Shown here in pieces: positions 18,985 through 48,130 of a stretch of DNA of 64,000 nucleotides (the stretch's first letter is position 1; each line of letters begins with the position of its first letter). The stretch lies in the IMG/VR virus record IMGVR_UViG_3300042868_009074, positions 62,001-126,000 of that record; one strand, given 5' to 3'. Under the pieces are notes generated by a model. The model was not told where the DNA came from. It was given only the letters and a program-made list of their open reading frames with translations, and searched no databases. The position numbers were made by a program, and so were the translations under genes.

Positions 18985-19388
18985 TAGCTTTCCTTTTTAA
19001 ATTCCTGGAATGTTTTATCACCAACACCAAAGTATTCTCTAGCTAAACCAGATTTTACGATAGCTTCGTTTAGACATTCTCCTGCTTCGTTCCATACTCT
19101 AGCAAGGATTCTTCCATATTTTTCATTTTTATCAAGAATTGTTTCTATTTTAACTTTTTTACCGGCAGCTGTAATCCATTGGTCGGTAAACTCTTTTGCA
19201 GCAAGTCCCATTTTCTTTTCTTCAAGATTTGTAGTACGGCTTTCCGGCGTATTCACGCCATAAAGTCTTACGCTTTTTGGCCCAAACTTTACTTCAAAAC
19301 CAAGATCAACTACGATCTTAAAGGTGTCTCCATCTACTACTTTAATTACTTCTGCATTGTATAAATATACATTAAATTTTTCTGTCAT
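18984..19388 (-). CDS. Thermonuclease (SNase) family nuclease
   Basis: VVDGDT, VRLYGVNTPE, KYGRILA. Confidence 0.9.
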   Translation of the reverse strand: MTEKFNVYLYNAEVIKVVDGDTFKIVVDLGFEVKFGPKSVRLYGVNTPESRTTNLEEKKMGLAAKEFTDQWITAAGKKVKIETILDKNEKYGRILARVWNEAGECLNEAIVKSGLAREYFGVGDKTFQEFKKES

Positions 19389-19389
19389 T

Positions 19390-20193
19390 TTAATCTCTTT
19401 CTATTCCTATATGATCACATGCTTTTCTAAATATTTCTCTACTTATAGGGAAATAGGAATCTGCATGACTGACTCCTTGACCTGGTTTTGGTGTCGATGC
19501 GTGCCAACTGTGCCCTATCGAAACACTTCCATCGTAAACTACATTATACCCTAGATGTCTAGCAAAATATGAACACCAAGTTTCCTCATAATAGTGAGGG
19601 GTAGGAAGAAATGCCCCAATTGCGTCTGGGTATATTTCTCTATATTTTTCATTATTAGTTAGTGCGTCCCATACTTCTCTTCTAACAAAATAGGCAGATC
19701 CTGAAACTGTAACGCACTCTATGCGATCTCTATAAGCGGTATCTTGCGGATCAGGCTCTCTCCATGCTCTATGCTTTGGTTCAGTATTAGTTCCGATAAT
19801 TCCGGCATGGGTGATATAGCCTTGTTCATCTCTTTGCTTTGGTCCAAGAATATGGATTTCAGGATTCTCATCAAAAATCTGTTGAATCTTATAAACATCT
19901 GAGCTTGTCATCCAGATGTCTCCGTTTAGTACAGCTACTATGTCAGAAGATGTTTTACTTGCCATATAGTTTATAGCTGCAGAGTATCCTATATTCTTTC
20001 TAAGATAAGTTCTATCTATTTGATATCTTTCTTCATTTTCCCTAAGCCATGGAATAAAGTCATCTGTTGACTCATTATCCATTATTTGAAGAGTCCATAC
20101 TTTTTCTACTGAGTCTAAATCGGAATGTAACACGTCCAGCATTCTTTGCAGAAGCGGTCTTGTATTATAGTTAACTACACAAAGGTCTATCAT
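19390..20193 (-). CDS. Glycosyltransferase family 2
   Basis: VVNYNT, DNESTD, NIGYSAAIN, LNGD, VSGSAYFVRR, YYEET. Confidence 0.85.
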   Translation of the reverse strand: MIDLCVVNYNTRPLLQRMLDVLHSDLDSVEKVWTLQIMDNESTDDFIPWLRENEERYQIDRTYLRKNIGYSAAINYMASKTSSDIVAVLNGDIWMTSSDVYKIQQIFDENPEIHILGPKQRDEQGYITHAGIIGTNTEPKHRAWREPDPQDTAYRDRIECVTVSGSAYFVRREVWDALTNNEKYREIYPDAIGAFLPTPHYYEETWCSYFARHLGYNVVYDGSVSIGHSWHASTPKPGQGVSHADSYFPISREIFRKACDHIGIERD

Positions 20194-38300: not shown

Positions 38301-40983
38301 CTCTTATAACTTCATTATCGTCTACATCTACAGATGAATAACCTTCTGTTGGATAAGCGGTTTCACCCGGTACTGGCACTATTGCAACTGGGTTGGTGGT
38401 TGTTTTCTTGGAATATTGAGCGATTCCAGTTCCTGTAACATTTGCTTGCCAATTTACGTTAAAACCTAATGAGCTTTCAGTTGAACTTATGTAAGAGCTG
38501 TATGTGCTTAGGTTAAATGGATAACTTCTAAATGATGAAGACGTTAAAGATTGAGTAAATCTTTCTTGCATTAAAGAATTGCTGTATTGGATTGGTTTTT
38601 CTTTAATTATGTGAGGACCAAATCCACCTGGTATGGTGAATGGCAAAGAGCTTGATTCTGTGTAGGCAAATAAGTGAGAAGAGTATTGAGTCGGCTGTAT
38701 TCTAAATATCTTGTAAGAACTAGGAATATCGTTAACATCACCGGTTAATTCATTGTTTAATATTGGATTATTATTTGCAAATAAAACATTTTGATTAGTA
38801 ACTTCAACATATAGCTCTATTTTTGATAAGTCTATGTCTTGAAGAAGAATGCTATATTGATCAGGTATTGAGTCATAACAAATTCTCTTATAATAATCTA
38901 TTATTGAACCATAACTAGAAGTTAAATTTCTACAATATTTTCTTACACTAGGATAATTAAGGTCAGTCATTAAAGTGTAATCAGGTTTTTCTTGATCTAT
39001 TAATACAGAACCATTGACTACATAGGATGAATTCCAATTTCCTGTTATATAATACTTAGAAGAACGTATATCTAGAGTTCTTGAAGATTGTATCTTAGAC
39101 AGAGTAGCCACAGATACTGCATTATAGATAATCTTCATTGGACCTTCTATAGCTGCAGTAGGGTTGACTGTAGTCTCGGTAATAGAAGTGGATCCGGAGT
39201 TAGATGTACTTGTGTCATATAAACCAGCAGAAGTGTAAATGTTATTGCAATACTGCATTATTGGAGTTGTTGTCACTAATAGGTTACCCCTGACAAGGGC
39301 ATCGGCTGTTGGTCTATGTTCAGCTGTTACAAACATCGGCTTTGGAGAAGTTGCAGAAGTTACTTCTTTCATCAGTATATTAGAAGTAGTGATATCGGAA
39401 GAGGTAAAATGCCTGTACTGTTTTGGTGATAGTGAAGCAGCGTCTATGCTACTTCCATAAATTCCATAAACAACTGTACTGCCTATTTTTTCAAATATGC
39501 TATCGTTTATTGGCCAAGCGTTTGTTTTCGATTCATCTATAAACATATTGGTAGTATTGTATTGCCAGCTACTAAGAGCTGTTGTAGTGGAACTTATAGA
39601 AAGATAGGGGTAGACTGTAGTTGCTGCATTTGTTGGAAGGCTACTTGACGACAAGTCTAGTACTACAGTACCGTGTTTTGATTCAATAAAGTTTTTAATC
39701 TTTATTCCCTGAGGAGAAGATATCGCTGACGTTGGCGACCAAGCTACTATATCATAAGCATTTAAGTCGGTAACTTCATCTATATTTACTAACCAGTACT
39801 CAGCTTGTGATTTAGTGAATGCAGTTGATGCTAAAGGATTTGTGTAAGTATAAGAAGCCAAGTTAAAACTAGATTTTGCTAATCTAAAAAATATGTATGG
39901 ATTTAATCCGCTATATGTAGAGGAATTTCTAGCATTACTTAAGTCTGCAGAAGTGCACAAGACTGCACAATTTATTTGTCTATCTGTTAAGTTGCCTGCG
40001 GTATCTAATTCTCTTCCATAGTTTACGGAAGAAGTATTGGTATTTGAGTTTACCTTTGCTATTAATCTCCAGTTAAAAGTTTCATATGTCCTATTATCGG
40101 ACAATGCTTTTTTTGGAACAAATACTTGGAATCCATCATTTGCAGTATTGTCAGATACTACTGCATTTGCAGTGCTAACGGAAGGTTTTTTAGCAAATAT
40201 TTTCTTATACCTAGAAGTTGGATCAGCAACTATTGATTCTTCGCTAATTTTATTAAATAAAGAAACTTGATTAATACTTTCTATGTCTTTTAATTTAACT
40301 GAAGAAATAATATTTCCACCATATATTGTAACTTTATCGTATACTAAAGAAAGACCAATTGGATTAGTATCCTTTATAAGGACTATTACTGAATATGGTG
40401 TTGCAGTTCCCCTCTTTATGGAAGATACTCCAATTGGCTGTAGAAGTATTCTGTATTTTTTTATGCCAGTGTTTTTGTCTACGTATTCATCACCATTTTG
40501 ATCTATGACTTTTATTGATTTTGGAAGTTGACTTTCTTCTATAAAATCTGATAAATCATCACTAAAATATAAATGATTTTCAAGTAATGTATAACCTTTA
40601 GATACATAATATGAATGACAAAATGTCTTATCGTTTAGCTGAGCAGCGGAATACTCCATGTCAATATTTCTATCTGACAAAAATATATCACTTATACTTA
40701 TTTCATCAGAGTTAAATACTGTATTTCCAGATAAATCCTCTAATATACCTAGCTCATTTGCAAAGAAAAGTTTTGCACCAGCGCCCTGAGATTGTAGCAA
40801 ATCTGGATTTGAGTTTTCTGGTATAGTTGAAGAAACGTCTGTTATGACTATTGAACTAGATGGTGTTATTTCTTTAGACGAAAACCATTTAAGACCTAGA
40901 CTAGAATCATCTTTAGGAAGGTTTGATATTTTTTTTACGCTAAATTCATTACCATTTTTTGTTTTATCAACAAATTTTTTCAT
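35341..40983 (-). CDS. Large tail/baseplate-associated protein with peptidoglycan-binding domain
   Basis: 1880 aa; VKYIQYTL..IDGAFGAQTK..FQK..GGVDSET PG-binding-1-like motif; C-terminal DMRIRGGG..WDI. Confidence 0.7.
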   Translation of the reverse strand: MKKFVDKTKNGNEFSVKKISNLPKDDSSLGLKWFSSKEITPSSSIVITDVSSTIPENSNPDLLQSQGAGAKLFFANELGILEDLSGNTVFNSDEISISDIFLSDRNIDMEYSAAQLNDKTFCHSYYVSKGYTLLENHLYFSDDLSDFIEESQLPKSIKVIDQNGDEYVDKNTGIKKYRILLQPIGVSSIKRGTATPYSVIVLIKDTNPIGLSLVYDKVTIYGGNIISSVKLKDIESINQVSLFNKISEESIVADPTSRYKKIFAKKPSVSTANAVVSDNTANDGFQVFVPKKALSDNRTYETFNWRLIAKVNSNTNTSSVNYGRELDTAGNLTDRQINCAVLCTSADLSNARNSSTYSGLNPYIFFRLAKSSFNLASYTYTNPLASTAFTKSQAEYWLVNIDEVTDLNAYDIVAWSPTSAISSPQGIKIKNFIESKHGTVVLDLSSSSLPTNAATTVYPYLSISSTTTALSSWQYNTTNMFIDESKTNAWPINDSIFEKIGSTVVYGIYGSSIDAASLSPKQYRHFTSSDITTSNILMKEVTSATSPKPMFVTAEHRPTADALVRGNLLVTTTPIMQYCNNIYTSAGLYDTSTSNSGSTSITETTVNPTAAIEGPMKIIYNAVSVATLSKIQSSRTLDIRSSKYYITGNWNSSYVVNGSVLIDQEKPDYTLMTDLNYPSVRKYCRNLTSSYGSIIDYYKRICYDSIPDQYSILLQDIDLSKIELYVEVTNQNVLFANNNPILNNELTGDVNDIPSSYKIFRIQPTQYSSHLFAYTESSSLPFTIPGGFGPHIIKEKPIQYSNSLMQERFTQSLTSSSFRSYPFNLSTYSSYISSTESSLGFNVNWQANVTGTGIAQYSKKTTTNPVAIVPVPGETAYPTEGYSSVDVDDNEVIRDLPSEQRISTPKNNFFYSGDININKYFLQYGTDPEDRKSGEYVKYIQYTLAYSGIASIKGIKIDGAFGAQTKSFMSIFQKQKDEIYTEGGVDSETKSYLIRVWKDLYKNNRKAFDAAVAKIRKQDPEVIKYIAEHHNPEISELSDSDKSYRRISFSGSRKDGPKGTIRDTIYVRIPKKYNTEASSTTLNAKLTSIRITPGDFDGASSYQGIKIISIKAYKAKSNGKPNGSQFSLIKKDTLFFKDSKEFPVNRLDSSYVWVGITLEGRSLGGIFGTKAEGYSVDNISFGISYDQAPAVTPAAVETLLPTFTKPFSVSFKISGTKNDVNVNSPKTIDLTGRKVTDSPYTVSNILLTYTNDADQIVSDATLTTIDFNSTKSLAYHSVNGTNTYDTNVTLNYRDLVFTVSNPVVTAVTSSSGSIGSTSNISAVVTANNLTLSTSALNYQNGIYQNSIPAPVSSYWMLKQDGSLIKNSKNTITVLDGLLLLCQPSEAPGIVGKPIGVLPAPVSLTPSVNQEINIDYGSLILSNSIADTSGYIYGYYDNLRKEFLGSVLTYLEYQNRGPNNIYIGVLATDADGNMGTSVDFIGQRTATTINPVSIPMKAAYPVYSVVYKNSTKIRVNSIERKTSKFNQWPLYISSGSFIKDFYIDPSYGWTDILKNYKKQTLRATYSTLSMKNIPWSKFLGRPYIDVVEEVPNIISSRKIQLSSTPIASINEPSYNNVGYIKSIIKVKVKDSISDSDWKIIPNSSIKNIDCNTGIIDFYDTIVPSNPLLICVDYTVVSNGIPLKQINGNPIPINPFLNKDIIESDKALYIYIKPVKIEYRTSNTSSYTWRLFENYNYDTPINFTYDNSIFDPYDSVNFDPFALPIAVIHVMNNFKAKDITLQDMRIRGGGVKSSDSTSNGVYGDLGINKLLSDIKESLSFWDIYPPLQHSYPKGGFVIIRLPKEVINNFENPEEIYSIIERNLTAGVAYKLQDMDGVDWGKA

Positions 40984-43900
40984 TATTCTTCCTCATAATC
41001 CTTGATTAAAGAATCGTAATTTTCTATATAGTAAGGAGTGCTACCAAGCATTCCGGACTGATATTGCTCATATCTACTTACGGTAAACCACTTAGGTGGA
41101 GTCCATCTAAGCGTTGTATTTTGGACATCAACTTGATCTCTATTTGCATAATTTATTTTAAAGTTAGGAGTAGCATAAAGATCCCACGATTTACTAACAT
41201 CATAATTAATTATTTCGTTTATTCCTACGTTTGAATTAAAGTTATAATTAATTGCATCGTAATCTTCTAGCCAATAGACTATATCTCCTTCTATAGTAGA
41301 GGGTGTTACTGAAGGATTGGAAGAAAAATCTGACTCTACAGCAACGAACCAGTAACCGGGATCTGTTCTTGAGGTGGATACTATAGGCCCTATCGAGAAT
41401 CTTCCTTGAGAATCAGAATATACAATTCCTGAAAAACGATTATTTGATGGTGCTAATTCAGATGTTGAATATGATACTTCTGTAAATAATTGATAGTTTG
41501 TTCTTGATTTTCTCCAGTATATTACAGATCCTGAGACTGGAACACCATTATCCATTATTAAGCCATTTATGAAAATACTAGATACACCATCTGATTTAAT
41601 AATTTTATTTGATACTTCAGATTTTATTGATTTTCCTGAATTAACAGTTTCAGGAAGTATTTCAATTAAGATATTTTTTGAATAGCCTGTTTTTGAAATT
41701 GTAATAGATCCATAAGTTTCTACTGATACAGCTTGAGTTGAAGTTGCCCTAAAATGTGCGTAACCCTCTTCGTCTGTGGTAACTGTTGATACAGAAGGTG
41801 TTATCTTAGATCCCGAAATATTTAATACCTGATATGGTTTAGGATTTCCGTTAACATCTAAGGAAACAATTGATATGTCTACATAATCTTTTCCGTCATT
41901 AATTACATATTTAGGAGAAACATTAATCTGTAATGAGTTAAAATCGTACTCTTCTGTTACCACTGCAATATATCCATCATCAAGCCACGAAGTTAATGGA
42001 TTTAGATCTATGGAAACAGGTGTTGCCATTTCATAATCAGAAGTTTCATATGTAACATTATAAGAATAGTTATAGTTTGGTGTAGCATCAAAATATACGG
42101 ATGTAACGTAATTATTATTTACTAGCTCTGTGTCTATATAATAAGAATCATGAACCCTATATCCCAATAAGTATTCTCTCTGAGGATTCAACATTATTCC
42201 ACTAGGCGGAGTTGCCATATTGGGAGTAGCAGATAGGTTAGTTGCAACTAACTCACCGGTACTGAGATCCTTTATCGTTAAATTGTATGTGTTTTTATAA
42301 CCTAAATAGAAAGAATTATCCATTTTTGGTTTTAAAATTTCTGTATTATAGAAAGAAAAACTGCCGGGTGTAGCTGTGTCAGAAAATGCTATTTCCTGGT
42401 AAGAACTAACCGGTGTTGAGTGATTATCTATTACTTCAACTATAATTGGAGCACCGTGTGTAGGATTAGACTTCAAGGAAAGTTTATGTAATTTTCCGGT
42501 AAAAGTTTCCTTTACTGGCTTTGCGTATATATACTGTTCTTCTTTGTCAACTGAGATCCAACCTGTTTTTAGCTTAGCATCTATTTTATCGCTAAATAGT
42601 TTTCCTCTAATATTAATGTTAGTAAATGTGGTTGTACCTTTTACCGGATCATAAGTTTCAACGATTGAATCAAGTGGATACTCTATAATTTCGACATGAT
42701 CTAATTGATTGTTTATTGCGTCAGAAATTGAATTTTCTAATACATATGTTCTATTTAAAAATGGTTTTACAACTTTTTGATCTGACCATACAGAAACGTT
42801 TACATCATATGGATCAATTACCTTAATGTTTTCAAAGAAATAATCAAATTTATTTTCATTTGTTAATCCAAATGTGCTAAAAAATGTTTCTCTAGTTATA
42901 GTTGGAAGATCTACAATGTTATTATTTAATCCAGGTATTCTTTCGCCGTTTTCAATACTGTATCTTATGATTCCATTTTCGTCTACTACGCTATTTGTAA
43001 TAGGAGTTGAATATTGCTCAAAAGGATCCCATTCAATTGCGGTAAATGGATACTTTGAACTATCAGCAGTTTTTATGATTATACTATCAGGTGTTGCGGA
43101 AACTGGATATTCTAGTTTTCCAAAATAATAATTAGCGGTTGCTCCAGAATTAGTAGACCCAATGTATCCAAAATTGTTAGTTGCTTGAGAACCTCTGTAT
43201 ACAGAAGCTATTATATTTGGAGAAGCTGGAATAAATACATCTCTATCTATTTCATTATAGTGTGAAACTCCACCATAGATAGATATTGTGTCTTCTTCTA
43301 GCTGACCAGGTGAATCATAAGCGGTATAAGGAATCAGCGTTTCTATGTGAACGGAAACAGGAGTTGCACCTGGTGGGTATATTATGGATGATTTTATTTG
43401 GGAAAGAGGTAGAGAAACACTTGGTGTAGAAGAAGTTGGTGAATCATTTATTGTTAAACTATTCTTGGTGCGAATTGTTTCAAATGTTGATACTTTTTGG
43501 TTATAAAGATTTGATACTATTTTTACACTTGTATTCATATCAAAGTTGGGAGTACTTGCATTTATTTCAGATGTAGAAGATTTTAAAATAATATTAGGTT
43601 TGTGTGAAAACATAGCACTAAAAGAATCAGAGTTTGGAGTAGCATATGTTGTTCCATTCCATAAGCCATTCTTTAGTTTTATATTTTTTATTTTATTATA
43701 AGGTATTTTAGAAGAGGTATAAGCACCGTTAAAGCTGAGCACTAATGGCTGAAGTGAACTCTTTCTCTTTAAGTTTAAGTCAGTGTCAGTAAAACCTTCT
43801 GTATCAAATATTTTGACTTCATGGAATTCTGGGCTAGCAGAACTAGTTGGTGAAAATTGATTTTTTACATATCTTATTATAGTTGTATATATATCAGTGT

Positions 43901-45744
43901 CAGTAGTAACGTTTCCGTATGGAACTAATGTTCCTTCTAGAGTTAAATTAACAGTAGCTAAATTATTATCATAAATAACTTGATTATATTTTGAATAATA
44001 TTCATAATCTACCTTAACGGGAGAATAATCTAAGCTGGTTCCAACTTTTTTCTTTCCTGTTGCTACAAGTATTGTTTGAAATGCTACCGGAGTAGCTGAA
44101 TTGTCTAATACTATTACTTCTGCGTCTGATAGATCTCCTACACCTGGCTGATAATGTATTCCTGTAAAATCATTATTATCATCATAATACCTGGAAGTTA
44201 TTCTATCTACGCCTTCTTGATATTGTCCAGAAGCATCCCATACTGCTTCATTGAATTTAAAGTATCCCCAATGAGTTGGATATTTTTCATTTAAGTTTCT
44301 TACTAAATCTATAAATTTTTGTTTTGGATTACCATCTGCGTAAAAGAACTCTAATGAGCTTTCTATGTCAGTCATTTCCAATACTGTAGGAGTTGCATAC
44401 TCTGCATTGTGATCTGGTGTTGCTCCAAATGCGGTCCAAAGATCGAGTTCTCTTCTTAGTGTTTTTTTAAAACCAGATATATTAGAAGATATTGGATTTT
44501 TAAAAACATCTAATATTCTAAATTTAAAAGAAGAGTTACTCTCTAGGTAGAGTCTATTTAGACCCACTCTAGCACCGTATTCATCAAACCAGTTGAACCT
44601 TTGCATTGCAGCTTGTGCTAAAACAGTTGAACCAGAATTGACACTGTAGGCTACTATGTCATTAAACTTTTGAATAGTTATAATTTGCCTGTTAATAGGA
44701 TTGTGATAATACACGTAATCAGTATCTTTAGCTTCATAAAGATCCGATATCTCATCTACCTTAGTTAGTTCTACATCATCTCCGTATATCTTATTGAAGG
44801 TGTTTGGAACGTTTAATGAAGAGTACATCCAAGCTATCTGATCAAGATCTGCAGTACCAATAAATCTATTTATATTATGTATATCTATCTCAGTGTCAAA
44901 AGAGTCTAAGTTATCCATCAATACTGAGTTGATGAATTTTCCACCAGTACTTTTTGGAATAAATTGATTTTGATCTACCTGATCTTCTGCATCGGAATAT
45001 AACTTTGTCCATGATGGAAATTTCTTTAATATATTCTTAGAAGAATTTGATAAAACGGGACTAATAGGGTCTGCTATTGCTATTTCTATTAGTAATATAA
45101 AATCTAATATAGAAAGATCTACTACCTCGGTATCAAGAATTACTTCAAACTTTGCGTATCTTTTTGCGTCTCTTGCTAATAGTATTGAGCCTAAAGAACT
45201 TGAAGTGGTTGTTGTAGAAAGAAGCCACGGTCCGCTCTAATGAGTCAGATTCGTATACGTTAAGACTATAGAAAACTTGTTCTAATCCACCGTATCTATT
45301 GGTAAATGCCCCTTTAAATGATCTAATATCGACTCTTGAAGTAGTGTCAACGAATCTAAGAATATCCGGCGTTGCAATATCTGAGACAATCTCTCCATAG
45401 TTTGTCTGATAAACCGAGTTTGCTACTGTTGGTGTAGCTAAATCATAATTAGAAAAATCTGGGTCAGTATAGACCAAGAAAGTAGGACTTGCTTCTGGTG
45501 AATCGTTTAGATACAAATAGCTAGGGCTTGAATACTCTGTGCTGTTGATGTAAAAGAATACGTCACCTGTTTTTTCTGTACCAACAAACTTATAGTCTCC
45601 TAATACATTAAGACCAGTTATAGATCTTTTATTGGAAAAGTTTGTATAGTAGTTGTTGGCATAGAGGTCTATTACTTGAGTAGTCCATACTTTTTCATTC
45701 TTGCTAAAGTCATAAGCGTTAAAGCTTAATAGAAAACTCTTCAT
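40983..45744 (-). CDS. Large baseplate wedge/tail protein, 1586 aa, needs +1 recoding at CGGA 45231-45234
   Basis: ...ESDSLE-G-PWLLS...KKFPSWTKLY... open into the 1312-aa ORF; FDEYGARVGLNRL..E.N..FK.RI baseplate-like motif; Ig-like segments; follows baseplate J. Confidence 0.8.
41025..41034 (-). promoter_or_regulatory. Putative late-promoter motif TTACTATATA
   Basis: Third copy, inside the 3' end of the upstream CDS, 42 nt before ATG 40983. Confidence 0.4.
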
Positions 45745-45755
45745 TTATAATGCCC

Positions 45756-46943
45756 TTAAATTGAGTCTAGCCAAATACTGTATTCACAAGTGAGTCCATT
45801 TTCTGGGTGTACATACATAAGTTGCTGAGAAGGCCTACTCATTGAAGAGAAAAACTCTTGTGCGTAGGTATTGTAGCTCTCTGGTGAACCAGATATTCTC
45901 AATGTTGCGCTTCCTATTGTCATCTTGAAAGATTGGTGATAGTGACCCATGAAAACATCATCAAAATGCTCCGGAATTGCACCGTCTTTCCAGCCCATTA
46001 TCTTTTTATAGTAACCATGAAAGGCATTGGGTGAAGGTAATTGATCGCCATGAATTAAAAGGCTGCTATAGCTTCCTATGCTGTCTACGGCATACCAGTG
46101 TCTTTCGCCTTTTCCATCTGGAATATTGAAAGTAATTCTAGGCTCGTCTTTAAATATTAGTCTAAGAATCTGATAAAGAAGTCGATCCATATTAGTCTCT
46201 GGGTCATGCTGCTTTCTTCCTCGGCCACCTACGGCACCATGGTTGCCTATGACTCCAGTAACATGAACGTGCTCAAAATTTTCTAAAGCAGTTTTTAGGA
46301 ACTTGGTTAATATCTCTGGTCCGTTAACGCCTACTTGACGATATAACCCTGAGTCGATTAGATGAGCTTGTCCAGGAAAGATTTCCTCTCCCTCTACAAT
46401 ATCACCTAACATCCAAACATGGAGATCATTTACTGGGTGATGCTTTCTTTGTATCTCAGTAATCTCAAGAAGCTTTTCAGTATATAGTTCTATTCTTTCA
46501 GCAGCTACATTAGAGTTATAGTCAGGAGTAACTTTTCCTAATTGCCAGTCTGCGAATACAGCTACCGCTGTCTCTGGAACTCCTGGTGCAGATTTAATAA
46601 CTGGTTTTTTAGTTGCAGGGACATTGAACGTAGTAAAAGCATCGTATGCTGCTTCATAGATGGCCACTACTGCCTCATCTTTAACGTTCTTATACTTGTC
46701 TGCTAATCTAGCTAATCTTCTGTTCTCTGATCTTAAAAAATCGCTTTTTCCCTCTTCCATATCAGATATAGGAGAAATTATATCTTCTACTACTTCTTTT
46801 TGATCAGTGATATTGGAATCTATTTCTTCTAGTAAAACTTCGCCAGGAAAATCGTCATACCCCTCAGCAAGGTTTCTTGCATGAGTCATGTTGGCAGCCT
46901 TGACGATCTGCTTACGTATTACTGTGTAGAATTTTTCTGACAT
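45756..46943 (-). CDS. Calcineurin-like metallophosphoesterase
   Basis: ADWQLG, LGDIVEG, GNHG, HGD and GHYH motifs. Confidence 0.85.
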   Translation of the reverse strand: MSEKFYTVIRKQIVKAANMTHARNLAEGYDDFPGEVLLEEIDSNITDQKEVVEDIISPISDMEEGKSDFLRSENRRLARLADKYKNVKDEAVVAIYEAAYDAFTTFNVPATKKPVIKSAPGVPETAVAVFADWQLGKVTPDYNSNVAAERIELYTEKLLEITEIQRKHHPVNDLHVWMLGDIVEGEEIFPGQAHLIDSGLYRQVGVNGPEILTKFLKTALENFEHVHVTGVIGNHGAVGGRGRKQHDPETNMDRLLYQILRLIFKDEPRITFNIPDGKGERHWYAVDSIGSYSSLLIHGDQLPSPNAFHGYYKKIMGWKDGAIPEHFDDVFMGHYHQSFKMTIGSATLRISGSPESYNTYAQEFFSSMSRPSQQLMYVHPENGLTCEYSIWLDSI

Positions 46944-46960: not shown

Positions 46961-48130
46961 TTAGTAGCCTGAACTACCAATTATAACAGAATATACTCCT
47001 ACTGCGCCAGCTCCCATGTAACTTTTATCATCTGATAATCTATAGTTTACATTTGGTACACTTTTTTTATCTACTGATAAATTATTAACCGTAACACCAA
47101 CTATGAAGTCAGAAGCATATTTAGCTTGTGATTCCATCTCTTGAACCGAGATAGAACTACCAATTGTTAGAGAGTTTAAATATCTTATCAAAAATATTCT
47201 TGCTTGCATTTCAATTGCAGTAGCAGCCTGTGATGATGTGCCTTGCTTTAAAGTCAAGGTAACACTTACGTCTACTGACTTTTTGACAGCGACTCTAGTA
47301 TTAATTCTTATACCTAGTGGTTTTGCTCCACTGACTGCAGTGTAAACTATTTCTGGAATGTTACCTAAAGACGAAGGACTCTCTGGGACTATTAGCAGGT
47401 CACAAGATCCAATCCCGTATGATCCTTCTTTAATCTTGACGTCTTTAACACCTTTAACTGATAAGGCTGCAAATCTTATAGACTCAGCAGTACCGGAACT
47501 ACTTCCTCTAATAGCTGAAACTATTCTTTTTCTATAGTTGTCATCGGCTTCTGCATTTATCGCAGCATAGACTTCCTTAGGGTTTGTACAAAATACTACG
47601 GCCCCTGGAGGTGCTATGAAGTTATGCTTTACTAACGTATCTCTAGCTGCGGTAATCCCAGTATTTTCATATTTGGCCTTTACCGCACCGTACACTGACG
47701 TGGCACCAGATTGTATGAGGACGCTGCCACTGAGTTCATAAGCGTATTGAATGTCATTAAAGTTATCTACGTTATTGTAAACCAACGTTCCAGAAGGAAT
47801 CGTTATATCACTAGAGTACGGTGAGGTCAAATAGAACTGTATATTGGAAGTTATCCTATCTGTGACCAACTCATCAGCTATGCTTCTTCTAGAGACGTTG
47901 TAGAGCTCTCCTATGGCATCTAGGTTCTTACCGGATGCTAGGGCTAGGCTGGATTGTTCTACGCTAATTTTAAAAGAACTATAAAGATCTGCTATTTCAG
48001 TAGTTATAGCTTCAGCAAAAGCTCTGGCTATTGAACCAGGAGATATTGAAGAAATACCAGCGTTTCTCTGCAAGGAGTCTAATGCGTTTATTAGCATCTG
48101 TTCTTTTGTTTTGGTATTCAGGATTGGCAT
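46961..48130 (-). CDS. Baseplate J-like wedge protein
   Basis: PGSIAR, ASGKNLDAIG, EADDNYRKRI, ALSVKGVKDV. Confidence 0.88.
   Translation of the reverse strand: MPILNTKTKEQMLINALDSLQRNAGISSISPGSIARAFAEAITTEIADLYSSFKISVEQSSLALASGKNLDAIGELYNVSRRSIADELVTDRITSNIQFYLTSPYSSDITIPSGTLVYNNVDNFNDIQYAYELSGSVLIQSGATSVYGAVKAKYENTGITAARDTLVKHNFIAPPGAVVFCTNPKEVYAAINAEADDNYRKRIVSAIRGSSSGTAESIRFAALSVKGVKDVKIKEGSYGIGSCDLLIVPESPSSLGNIPEIVYTAVSGAKPLGIRINTRVAVKKSVDVSVTLTLKQGTSSQAATAIEMQARIFLIRYLNSLTIGSSISVQEMESQAKYASDFIVGVTVNNLSVDKKSVPNVNYRLSDDKSYMGAGAVGVYSVIIGSSGY

What the first reader, a model, noticed from the sequence alone, without database searches (positions are those of the whole stretch)
40983..45744. 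Dispersed Ala-Thr-Pro motif repeated about 14 times in the baseplate protein: candidate modification sequon
Seen: LATP, IATP, GATP (x2), YATP (x3), SATP (x3), TATP, MATP (x2) and DATP, plus several STP/ASP variants. Composition predicts well under one ATP tripeptide in a protein this size. The motif recurs in neighbours (HATPTPGQAWATPN at ~31.2 kb; GTATPY in the 1880-aa protein). The flanks are not repeated, so this is a selected short linear motif rather than a tandem duplication. Inference: these may be O-glycosylation sites for the phage's GT2/RmlB enzymes (virion glycosylation is known in actinophages), phosphorylation sites, or docking sites for an accessory fibre protein.
Basis: partly seen in the sequence, partly recalled or inferred. 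Interest (0 to 1): 0.62.

Follow-up and report, generated by a model that had tools for sequence, protein, structure and literature searches.

The report
Conserved Ala/Ser-Thr-Pro motif in baseplate protein
A large baseplate protein of an uncultured freshwater jumbo phage, and all 80 relatives found, carries about 20 scattered copies of the three-residue motif Ala/Ser-Thr-Pro where about one is expected; the motif sits in variable loops and shifts position between relatives, like a modification site, but whether it is modified is untested.

Summary
There are 14 Ala-Thr-Pro (ATP) tripeptides, 2 in ORF A (45145..45744, minus strand) and 12 in ORF B (40983..45236, minus strand), against 0.28 expected. 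The codons vary, so selection acts on the peptide. The true motif is [Ala/Ser]-Thr-Pro. Across 81 family members ATP is 40-fold enriched and STP 11-fold, and 86% of all Thr-Pro dipeptides follow Ala or Ser.

Every homolog down to 27% identity has 6-25 copies. The other baseplate proteins in four phages sit at chance level. The flanks show no internal repeats. The motif is a conserved island in variable, indel-prone loops. About ten sites are widely conserved, the rest turn over, and the count stays near 19.

Its function is untested. My best guess (about 0.4) is a Thr O-glycosylation sequon. GT2 genes are present in 6 of 6 complete genomes of this clade. A structural loop motif (about 0.3) is not excluded.

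Two corrections. The "one protein" is two ORFs joined by a +1 frame break at the genome's rarest codon (CGG), possibly a programmed frameshift. The motifs in neighbouring proteins are not above chance.

The parts
45145..45744 (-). ORF A, 199 aa. It is the N-terminal part of the baseplate protein and holds 2 ATP motifs (residues 103 and 124).
   Evidence: Residues 1-167 align to the N-termini of in-frame (fused) homologs.
40983..45236 (-). ORF B, 1417 codons stop-to-stop. The first canonical start is TTG at 44921 (codon 106). It holds 12 ATP, 5 STP and 2 ASP.
   Evidence: 80 homologs cover it from residue 1.
45226..45246 (-). +1 frame break joining ORF A to ORF B. The sense strand reads GAC TCA TTA GAG CGG ACC. 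The zero-frame CGG is the genome's rarest codon, and the +1 codon GGA is common.
   Evidence: Contigs from four lake runs show the same junction and no indel.
45430..45438 (-). ATP motif (DLATPTV), ORF A residue 103
45367..45375 (-). ATP motif (DIATPDI), ORF A residue 124
44415..44423 (-). ATP motif (FGATPDH), ORF B residue 272. 59 of 76 homologs have [AS]TP here.
44388..44396 (-). ATP motif (EYATPTV), ORF B residue 281. This is the most conserved site (74 of 76) and probably corresponds to the single ATP of Bacillus phage WH1 gp087 (not aligned here).
44088..44096 (-). ATP motif (NSATPVA), residue 381 (35 of 76)
43635..43643 (-). ATP motif (TYATPNS), residue 532 (33 of 76)
43548..43556 (-). 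STP motif (NASTPNF), residue 561 (47 of 81)
43422..43430 (-). STP motif (TSSTPSV), residue 603. It is lineage-specific.
43359..43367 (-). ATP motif (PGATPVS), residue 624 (66 of 75)
43089..43097 (-). ATP motif (VSATPDS), residue 714 (54 of 80)
43002..43010 (-). STP motif (QYSTPIT), residue 743 (42 of 80)
42411..42419 (-). STP motif (NHSTPVS), residue 940 (49 of 74)
42366..42374 (-). ATP motif (DTATPGS), residue 955 (60 of 75)
42222..42230 (-). ATP motif (LSATPNM), residue 1003. It is lineage-specific (9 of 80).
42207..42215 (-). ATP motif (NMATPPS), residue 1008. It is lineage-specific (7 of 80) and lost in the 88%-identical P0002.
42078..42086 (-). ATP motif (FDATPNY), residue 1051 (74 of 81)
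42018..42026 (-). ATP motif (EMATPVS), residue 1071 (62 of 80)
41166..41174 (-). ATP motif (LYATPNF), residue 1355 (61 of 80)
41034..41042 (-). STP motif (LGSTPYY), residue 1399 (62 of 74)
44433..45038 (-). Conserved N-terminal region of ORF B (residues 67-268), matching PHROG 21059 'virion structural protein'. This is roughly the part shared with Bacillus jumbo phages.
41706..41930 (-). Ig-like (Big_1 / intimin-invasin type) domain, residues 1103-1177. It carries no motif in this phage.
   Evidence: Pfam Big_1, 33.5 bits (cut-off 34.9). VIA-align Z 13.2, rmsd 1.6 A over 93 residues to intimin 1f00.
46961..48130 (-). Baseplate J-like wedge protein. It provides the context that identifies this as the baseplate module.
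   Evidence: PF04865 E = 4e-15; PHROG 6
15291..15983 (-). GT2 glycosyltransferase (230 aa), a candidate writer. GT2 genes of similar size occur in related complete genomes; orthology was not tested.
19390..20193 (-). GT2 glycosyltransferase (267 aa), a candidate writer
17155..18165 (-).
   Evidence: PF16363 and PF01370, E about 1e-37
16337..17242 (-). PhyH-family 2-oxoglutarate/Fe(II) dioxygenase lying between the sugar genes
   Evidence: PF05721 E = 2e-25

Best explanation
Shown: [Ala/Ser]-Thr-Pro is a short linear motif under selection. It is specific to this one baseplate-arm protein family in a clade of freshwater jumbo myophages. It lies in variable loops of a chain of beta-sandwich domains. 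About ten sites are conserved, the rest are gained and lost, and the number per protein stays near 19.

Inferred: this is the behaviour expected of a site read by a trans-acting factor. I think the most likely reading is that the Thr is O-glycosylated in the cytoplasm by phage-encoded soluble glycosyltransferases. The small residue before the Thr and the Pro after it would act as the sequon. The result would be a glycan coat on the periphery of the baseplate. The modification itself, the enzyme and the sugar are all untested.
For: Enrichment: 14 ATP against 0.28 expected here. In the family there are 980 ATP (40-fold) and 528 STP (10.7-fold). The permutations APT, TAP, PTA, PAT and TPA occur only 7-41 times each. 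Of 1754 Thr-Pro dipeptides, 1508 follow Ala or Ser.

Residue requirements look like enzyme recognition. Thr is about 6-fold more frequent than Ser in the middle position (1508 against 260) even though Ser is the commoner residue. Val, Ile, Gly and Thr are not accepted at the first position. Lys and Arg are depleted 5- to 20-fold at positions -2 and -3.

Specificity: about 20 motifs in this protein against chance levels in all baseplate neighbours of four phages.

There are no repeated flanks. The motif is an island of low entropy (A 1.81, T 1.38, P 0.99 bits) between flanks that vary more than average (2.1-2.3 against a mean of 2.02) and are prone to indels.

Turnover with constant count: against P0077 at 30% identity, 4 sites are shared and 13 and 14 are unique, with totals of 17 and 18. 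The residues opposite the unique sites are unrelated polar residues. This resembles the shifting sequons of viral glycan shields.

Location: 10 of 13 confidently modelled motif prolines are in coil.

Writers are available. The genome has six GT2-like genes, a phosphoglucomutase/sugar-1-P nucleotidyltransferase fusion, an FkbM methyltransferase and an NDP-sugar dehydratase. GT2 genes occur in 5 of 5 further complete genomes of the clade. None occurs in Bacillus phage WH1, whose homolog has one ATP.

Precedent, from my own knowledge: mycobacteriophage virion glycosylation (Freeman et al. 2023, listed as reference 80 of PMC12582341), and cytoplasmic multi-site glycosylation of the HMW1 adhesin by HMW1C.
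Against: There is no direct evidence that any site is modified. No known bacterial or phage sequon is [AS]-T-P. The enrichment is confined to one protein, although other large exposed baseplate and fibre proteins are present. About ten sites are conserved down to 27% identity, which also fits a structural role. Motif prolines sit in the same kinds of places as the other prolines. The two GT2 genes in the window, which match in size the GT2 genes of relatives, lie among DNA-metabolism genes: DnaB-like helicase, nuclease, DenV, deoxyribosyltransferase and a dioxygenase. They could modify DNA or make polysaccharide. The best-matching GT2 resembles SpsA, a polysaccharide enzyme. The link between GT2 presence and motif richness rests on a single phylogenetic contrast. 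Solvent exposure could not be measured, because the tools return no model coordinates.
Confidence: 0.4

Rival explanations
1. Structural or folding motif. A Thr-Pro turn with a small preceding residue shapes or caps loops at the entrances to beta strands in this particular fold. It would be needed for folding, rigidity or protease resistance of the baseplate arm, with no modification involved.
For: About ten sites are conserved across the whole family, and the best-conserved one probably corresponds to the single ATP of the distant Bacillus phage homolog. Motifs lie in loops, often 0-5 residues before a strand. The enrichment is specific to one fold family. Pro-containing loops lacking Lys and Arg would resist proteases.
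Against: Neighbouring proteins rich in beta-sandwich structure have none. Frequent lineage-specific gains occur in loops that function without the motif in relatives. The immediate flanks vary more than average. The strict need for Thr, but not Val, Ile or Ser, and for Ala or Ser, but not Gly or Thr, is hard to explain by backbone geometry alone. Motif prolines are placed no differently from other prolines.
Confidence: 0.3
2. Docking or ligand motif. The loops carrying [AS]TP are bound by a partner present in many copies, such as an accessory fibre or decoration protein, a chaperone or prolyl isomerase, or a host surface component.
For: The motif is a conserved short island in variable loops and is specific to one protein.
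Against: About 19 binding sites per chain that keep changing position are unlikely for a stoichiometric structural partner. No candidate reader domain was identified. Three residues give little binding energy.
Confidence: 0.1
3. A different modification of the same motif. Examples are Pro hydroxylation, with or without glycosylation of the hydroxyproline, using the PhyH-family dioxygenase encoded between the sugar genes, or Thr phosphorylation.
For: A 2-oxoglutarate dioxygenase sits between a GT2 gene and the sugar dehydratase. From my own knowledge, hydroxyproline glycosylation targets Ala/Ser/Thr-Pro in plants and Thr-Pro in Skp1. Pro is the most invariant residue of the motif.
Against: PhyH is not the prolyl-4-hydroxylase family. 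No kinase was looked for or found. The preference for Thr over Ser points to the hydroxyl-bearing residue. There is no precedent in phages.
Confidence: 0.08
4. Artefact of composition, of a DNA-level word, or of hidden tandem repeats.
For: The protein is rich in Ser and Thr.
Against: The shuffle maximum is 4 against 14 observed. Permutation controls give 7-41 against 980. Synonymous codons vary. hhalign finds no repeats. All 80 homologs share the enrichment.
Confidence: 0.01

Closest known systems
Virion glycosylation in mycobacteriophages (Che8, Corndog, Myrna; Freeman et al. 2023, Cell Host Microbe, cited from memory and from the reference list of PMC12582341)
   Same: Phage-encoded soluble glycosyltransferases are found in the genome together with virion genes. 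O-linked modification of virion proteins takes place in the cytoplasm.
   Different: As I recall, in those phages the sites are on capsid and tail-tube subunits, not on a baseplate protein, and no [AS]-T-P sequon is described. Here modification is only inferred. The host is unknown and the phage comes from a low-GC lake lineage.
Shifting N-glycan sequons of viral envelope proteins (HIV Env, influenza HA) and the HMW1/HMW1C adhesin system
   Same: A short sequon occurs many times in one surface protein. It sits in variable, indel-prone loops. Some positions are fixed, others turn over, and the number is maintained. HMW1C works in the bacterial cytoplasm on about 30 sites of one adhesin.
   Different: Those sequons are Asn-X-Ser/Thr. 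N-X-[ST] is not enriched here (0.97-fold). No GT41 enzyme was looked for.
Bacteroidota general O-glycosylation sequon D-(S/T)-(A/I/L/V/M/T)
   Same: It is a three-residue O-glycosylation sequon on Thr or Ser in surface proteins.
   Different: That sequon is not enriched in this family (1.02-fold). Asp precedes the motif in only 13% of cases. The system is periplasmic, whereas a phage assembles in the cytoplasm.
Mucin-type O-GalNAc preference for Thr-Pro (X-T-P-X-P)
   Same: It shares a strong preference for Thr over Ser, a Pro right after the Thr, and small neighbouring residues.
   Different: A Pro two residues after the motif Pro is depleted here (0.09-fold; 8 [AS]TPxP among 1508 motifs). 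The phage GT2 genes resemble SpsA, not GT27 enzymes.
Baseplate structural protein of Bacillus jumbo phages (0305phi8-36 group; vB_BceM_WH1 gp087, Edson, KLEB27-3)
   Same: The gene lies in the same baseplate module as the baseplate J-like gene: directly after it in WH1, one gene further on here. Sequence similarity is 23-28% identity over residues 58-403.
   Different: The Bacillus proteins are about 536 aa, lack the long beta-sandwich arm and have a single ATP. WH1 has no GT2 gene.

Membership tests
Baseplate wedge/peripheral protein of 0305phi8-36-like jumbo myophages (PHROG 21059) | Sequence similarity to the family profile | tested here: met
   PHROG 21059 E = 1.2e-20 over residues 67-268. 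tblastn to Bacillus phages Edson, WH1 and KLEB27-3 gives E = 2e-14 to 1e-10.
Baseplate wedge/peripheral protein of 0305phi8-36-like jumbo myophages (PHROG 21059) | Position in the baseplate module, downstream of the baseplate J-like gene | tested here: met
   Baseplate_J lies at 46961..48130. The order is the same in WH1 and in three related metagenomic loci. One extra gene (45756..46943) is inserted here.
Bacterial Ig-like domain, group 1 (Big_1; intimin/invasin type) | Pfam gathering score | tested here: not met
   33.5 bits against a cut-off of 34.9, for residues 1103-1177.
Bacterial Ig-like domain, group 1 (Big_1; intimin/invasin type) | The fold | tested here: met
   Model residues 860-957 align to intimin 1f00 with Z 13.2, rmsd 1.6 A and 93 aligned residues.
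Protein O-glycosylation sequon (any system) | A glycan attached to the Thr | not testable with these tools
   This needs mass spectrometry of virions or of co-expressed protein.
Protein O-glycosylation sequon (any system) | A glycosyltransferase encoded with the target | tested here: inconclusive
   GT2 genes are present in 6 of 6 complete genomes of the clade. Their acceptor is unknown, and two of them lie among DNA-metabolism genes.
Protein O-glycosylation sequon (any system) | Sites exposed on the surface | tested here: inconclusive
   Sites lie in predicted loops and in polar, indel-prone alignment regions. No coordinates were available for solvent accessibility.
Bacteroidota O-glycosylation sequon D-(S/T)-(A/I/L/V/M/T) | Enrichment or match of that sequon | tested here: not met
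   502 observed against 493 expected.
N-glycosylation sequon N-X-S/T (HMW1C or PglB type) | Enrichment of that sequon | tested here: not met
   1468 observed against 1521 expected.
Thr-Gln ester-bond Ig-like adhesin domains (Cpe0147 type) | The HxDxxDxxQ catalytic/partner motif (as I recall it) | tested here: not met
   0 occurrences in 81 sequences. The fold hit to 4mkm is only generic Ig-like.
Tandem or dispersed domain repeats carrying a hallmark motif | Detectable homology between the flanks of different motif copies | tested here: not met
   hhalign of the +/-45-residue family profiles gives a best non-overlapping pair at 29% probability.
Programmed +1 ribosomal frameshift (Ty1/Ty3, prfB type) at the ORF A/ORF B junction | A rare zero-frame codon at the shift site, a conserved site, and a product collinear with in-frame homologs | tested here: met
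   CGG is the rarest codon (0.57 per 1000). The same site occurs in a 47%-identical relative. The product is collinear with YESDSL-D-GPWLLS of P0010.
Programmed +1 ribosomal frameshift (Ty1/Ty3, prfB type) at the ORF A/ORF B junction | A fused protein is actually made | not testable with these tools
   This needs the junction peptide by mass spectrometry or a reporter assay. A split gene is the alternative.

The most novel reading that the evidence does not exclude
A clade of freshwater jumbo phages coats one baseplate-arm protein with O-glycans at an evolving [Ala/Ser]-Thr-Pro sequon, written in the cytoplasm by phage-encoded GT2 enzymes. This would be the first defined glycosylation sequon of a phage virion protein, and a phage counterpart of the shifting glycan shields of enveloped viruses.
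Probability: 0.3. Interest if true: 0.8.

Novelty: new variant of a known kind. Interest (0 to 1): 0.6.

Why it matters
Phage virion glycosylation is known from very few systems, and no sequon has been defined for any of them. This is a sharply defined three-residue motif with about 1,500 natural instances in 81 proteins, a clear set of allowed and forbidden residues, and candidate enzymes in the same genomes. That turns "are phage tails glycosylated, and how are sites chosen?" into a direct co-expression and mass-spectrometry experiment that needs no cultured host. If the motif is a sequon, it could serve as a portable tag for glycoengineering and would mark this baseplate protein as being under shield-like selection. 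If it is structural, it is an unusually clean case of a tripeptide reinvented many times in one fold. The conserved +1 frame break at the rarest codon is a separate, testable candidate for programmed frameshifting in a baseplate gene.

Tried and rejected
- DNA-level word or methylation site: rejected, because the codons vary at all third positions.
- Hidden repeats: rejected by hhalign.
- Proteome-wide property: rejected. Outside this protein the genome has 52 [AS]TP against about 36 expected, and no other protein is convincing after multiple testing. The paralogous fibre N-termini share inherited 'SATPNF' copies.
- N-X-S/T, the Bacteroidota sequon, X-T-P-X-P and the ester-bond motif: none is enriched.
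- Link of the SpsA-like GT2 to polypeptide GalNAc-transferases through a weak Glyco_transf_7C hit: rejected, because its PDB relatives are SpsA, chondroitin synthase and similar enzymes.
- The gene 45756..46943 (PHROG 284 'exonuclease'), conserved next to the motif-rich protein: no Pfam, NCBIfam or PDB sequence match. Its role was left open.
- Near-identical DNA in cultured phages: none.
- ESM Atlas look-alikes: none usable.
- Literature searches for an [AS]-T-P phage or bacterial sequon: nothing relevant.
- Freeman 2023 could not be read.
- Variant positions in lake contigs: 14 SNPs in one strain, none in a motif codon, which is too few to be informative.
- The big representative search and complex prediction were not used. 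Homologs were plentiful, and no binding claim is made.
Full report
**What is there**

The window is bases 62001-126000 of a 267,766-bp IMG/VR virus record rated complete, with about 35% G+C. Lake-water metagenomes from 21 studies hold the same stretch. No cultured phage is close. The nearest are Bacillus jumbo myophages of the 0305phi8-36 group, at 23-30% protein identity.

The finding's span holds two minus-strand ORFs, not one. ORF A is 45145..45744 (199 aa). ORF B is 40983..45236, 1417 codons from stop to stop, with its first ATG/GTG/TTG only at codon 106. The surroundings are a baseplate module:
- a Baseplate_J protein at 46961..48130;
- one inserted gene at 45756..46943 (PHROG 284, no Pfam match);
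- then ORF A and ORF B;
- then proteins of 1880, 881, 615 and 739 aa.

The same gene order occurs in three related metagenomic loci. In Bacillus phage WH1 the short homolog gp087 directly follows baseplate J.

**Check of the observation**

ORF A has 2 ATP tripeptides and ORF B has 12. Composition predicts 0.28. In 20,000 shuffles the mean was 0.28 and the maximum 4. A first-order Markov expectation, itself inflated by the motif, is 3.2. The three codons vary freely at their third positions, so selection acts on the peptide and not on a DNA word.

In the rest of the window only three more ATP occur, in roughly 19,000 residues. Across the genome the protein stands alone, with p = 8e-17 for [AS]TP.

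**The motif is family-wide and wider than ATP**

A word-index search returned 80 homologs of 97-27% identity. Every one has 3-19 ATP where 0.1-0.8 is expected.

| Tripeptide (81 sequences) | Count | Enrichment |
|---|---|---|
| ATP | 980 | 40-fold |
| STP | 528 | 10.7-fold |
| ASP | 132 | 4-fold |
| GTP, TTP, VTP, AVP, AAP | – | at or below expectation |
| APT, TAP, PTA, PAT, TPA | 7-41 each | – |

Of 1754 Thr-Pro dipeptides, 1508 follow Ala or Ser. At alignment columns where ATP is common, the alternative is overwhelmingly STP (303), then ASP (24) and SSP (17). Within the closest clade, Ala and Ser toggle while Thr-Pro stays.

The motif is therefore [A/S]-T-P. The median is 19 copies per protein, with a range of 6-25 that includes truncated entries. 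This phage has 17 in ORF B and 2 in ORF A.

The flanks show only soft preferences. Gly, Asp and Ser are favoured just before the motif. Asn, Glu, Ser and His are favoured just after it. Lys and Arg are depleted 5- to 20-fold at positions -2 and -3. Pro is depleted 11-fold two residues after the motif.

**Not repeats, and specific to this protein**

Profile-profile comparison of the +/-45-residue neighbourhoods of all 19 sites found no homology, apart from windows that physically overlap. The best true pair had 29% probability. In three related phages the orthologous protein has 19-21 motifs against about 1 expected (p = 1e-18 to 1e-21). All other baseplate-module proteins together have 6 against 8.5 expected. 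The short Bacillus phage homolog has a single ATP (LYATPDG), probably at the family's most conserved site; I did not align it.

**Conservation and turnover**

| ORF B site | Homologs with [AS]TP |
|---|---|
| 281 | 74 of 76 |
| 1051 | 74 of 81 |
| 624 | 66 of 75 |
| 1399 | 62 of 74 |
| 955 | 60 of 75 |
| 272, 1071, 1355 | 76-78% |

In contrast, 64 of 101 position clusters occur in fewer than ten sequences.

Independent pairwise alignments confirm real gain and loss. Against P0015 (49% identity), 11 sites are shared, 6 are unique to this phage and 9 to P0015. Against P0077 (30% identity), 4 are shared and 13 and 14 are unique, yet the totals are 17 and 18. The residues opposite the unique sites are unrelated polar residues or gaps. 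Even the 88%-identical P0002 has lost one site.

Around well-populated motif columns the entropy falls to 1.81, 1.38 and 0.99 bits at A, T and P. The six residues on either side vary more than the protein average (2.1-2.3 against 2.02), and indels cluster just before and just after the motif.

**Structure**

An AlphaFold2 model of residues 240-1417, built from a 57-sequence alignment, has mean pLDDT 76 and is almost all beta. It matches chains of Ig-like or macroglobulin-like sandwiches. The clearest domain, residues 1097-1197, aligns to intimin and invasin with Z 13 and rmsd 1.6-2.0 A.

Of 13 motif prolines in confident regions, 10 are in coil, 2 in strand and 1 in a short helix. Their median distance to the next strand is 3 residues. 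The other prolines show the same pattern: 31 of 36 in coil, median 4 residues. The motifs are therefore in loops, as a modification site would need, but their placement is not special. Solvent exposure could not be computed because the tools return no coordinates.

**Candidate writers**

The genome has six GT2-like genes.
- Two are in the window (15291..15983 and 19390..20193). They lie beside an NDP-sugar dehydratase/epimerase and a PhyH-family dioxygenase.
- Four form a cassette just upstream of the window. It also holds a beta-phosphoglucomutase/sugar-1-P nucleotidyltransferase fusion and an FkbM methyltransferase, and it lies next to fibre-like genes.

Five further complete or nearly complete genomes of the clade (97-100% by CheckV, three with terminal repeats), whose baseplate proteins are 30-36% identical to this one, each have 2-3 GT2 genes. 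Bacillus phage WH1 has none. That is consistent with the glycosylation idea, but it is a single phylogenetic contrast.

The two GT2 genes in the window, which match in size the GT2 genes of the relatives, lie among a DnaB-like helicase, a nuclease, DenV and a deoxyribosyltransferase. DNA modification is therefore a serious alternative role. The strongest GT2 resembles the polysaccharide enzyme SpsA.

**Interpretation**

The shown facts match what is seen for sequons in viral surface proteins:
- strict residue requirements centred on a hydroxyl residue;
- location in variable loops;
- islands of conservation;
- positional turnover with a maintained count;
- restriction to one exposed virion protein.

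I therefore rank a Thr O-glycosylation sequon first, at about 0.4. A structural loop motif is second, at about 0.3. It explains the deeply conserved sites and the family specificity. It does not easily explain the repeated new gains or the absence from neighbouring beta-sandwich proteins. Docking (0.1) and other modifications such as Pro hydroxylation (0.08) follow.

Known sequons were tested and do not fit. N-X-S/T is at 0.97-fold, the Bacteroidota D-[ST]-[AILVMT] sequon at 1.02-fold, X-T-P-X-P is depleted, and the ester-bond motif is absent.

**Side finding: the frame break**

In-frame homologs read ...VYESDSL-D-GPWLLS... (P0010 and others). Here the sense strand reads TAC GAA TCT GAC TCA TTA GAG CGG ACC GTG G. 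ORF A continues as E-R-T-V for 30 more codons. The conserved continuation (S)GPWLLS lies in the +1 frame, directly after a TAG.

The first 105 codons of ORF B have no canonical start, yet they are conserved and free of stops. They must therefore be translated.

The zero-frame codon at the break is CGG, the rarest sense codon of the genome (47 of 82,700 codons). The +1 codon GGA is common. A relative only 47% identical has the break at the same codon (GAA CGG ACC). Contigs from four independent lake runs carry the junction without any indel.

In a model of a fused homolog the junction falls inside a beta-sandwich that spans residues 1-186. This looks like a hungry-codon +1 programmed frameshift. 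A gene split within a domain is the alternative.

**Verdict**

The specific function is open but directly testable.

Noticed in passing
window 45226-45246 (minus strand); also L012:9990-10040: ORF A and ORF B are joined by a +1 frame break exactly where in-frame homologs read YESDSL-D-GPWLLS. The zero-frame codon at the break is CGG, the rarest codon of the genome. The same site is used in a 47%-identical relative. Four independent lake assemblies show no indel. The break falls inside a predicted beta-sandwich. It is a candidate programmed +1 frameshift or a split gene.
   Followed up: partly
window 45756-46943 (minus strand): A 395-aa gene is inserted between baseplate J and the motif-rich protein in this phage and in three relatives, but not in Bacillus phage WH1. 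PHROG 284 calls it an 'exonuclease'. By eye it has metallophosphoesterase-like motifs (GD..., GNHG, GHYH). It has no Pfam, NCBIfam or PDB sequence match. Its role in a baseplate module is unexplained.
   Followed up: partly
window 12537-20193 (minus strand): This cluster mixes DNA-metabolism genes (DnaB-like helicase, SNase-like nuclease, DenV pyrimidine-dimer glycosylase, nucleoside deoxyribosyltransferase-like) with two GT2 genes, a PhyH-family dioxygenase and an NDP-sugar dehydratase/epimerase. It could be a DNA hypermodification (glycosylated base) module rather than protein glycosylation.
   Followed up: partly
genome 53322-58354 (just upstream of the window; L011:11323-16355): A glycan cassette lies next to fibre-like genes. 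It holds a beta-phosphoglucomutase/sugar-1-P nucleotidyltransferase fusion, an FkbM methyltransferase and three to four small soluble GT2 genes, one of them SpsA-like. With only 2-3 GT2 genes each, the five related complete genomes probably lack it.
   Followed up: partly
window 52936-63999 (minus strand): A giant ORF of more than 3687 aa runs off the window end. Relatives have 3696-3789 aa at the same position, upstream of the baseplate genes. It has no [AS]TP motif at all (0 against 0.68 ATP expected). Its identity was not examined.
   Followed up: no
whole genome; for example genome 48298-51375: The tripeptide TTT is the most enriched in the predicted proteome (104 against 24 expected). It occurs in Thr-rich stretches such as ...ITTTTISPPVTTII... 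in a 1025-aa protein beside the fibre genes. These could be linkers or another modification target.
   Followed up: no
genome 47273-48007 and 257875-259002 (outside the window): Two paralogous fibre-like proteins share an N-terminal segment with 'SATPNFSIDAGGKL.WSSGSAT...' followed by a 'DTTLYRSAADVLKTDD'-type motif. These account for much of the mild ATP excess outside the baseplate protein.
   Followed up: no
L010:9400-10100: The relative that encodes P0051 has a different frame break further upstream in the same N-terminal region (MKRYLLGL... in one frame, ...GDYTFVGTE... in another). N-terminal frame breaks may be recurrent in this gene family, or this one may be an assembly error.
   Followed up: no
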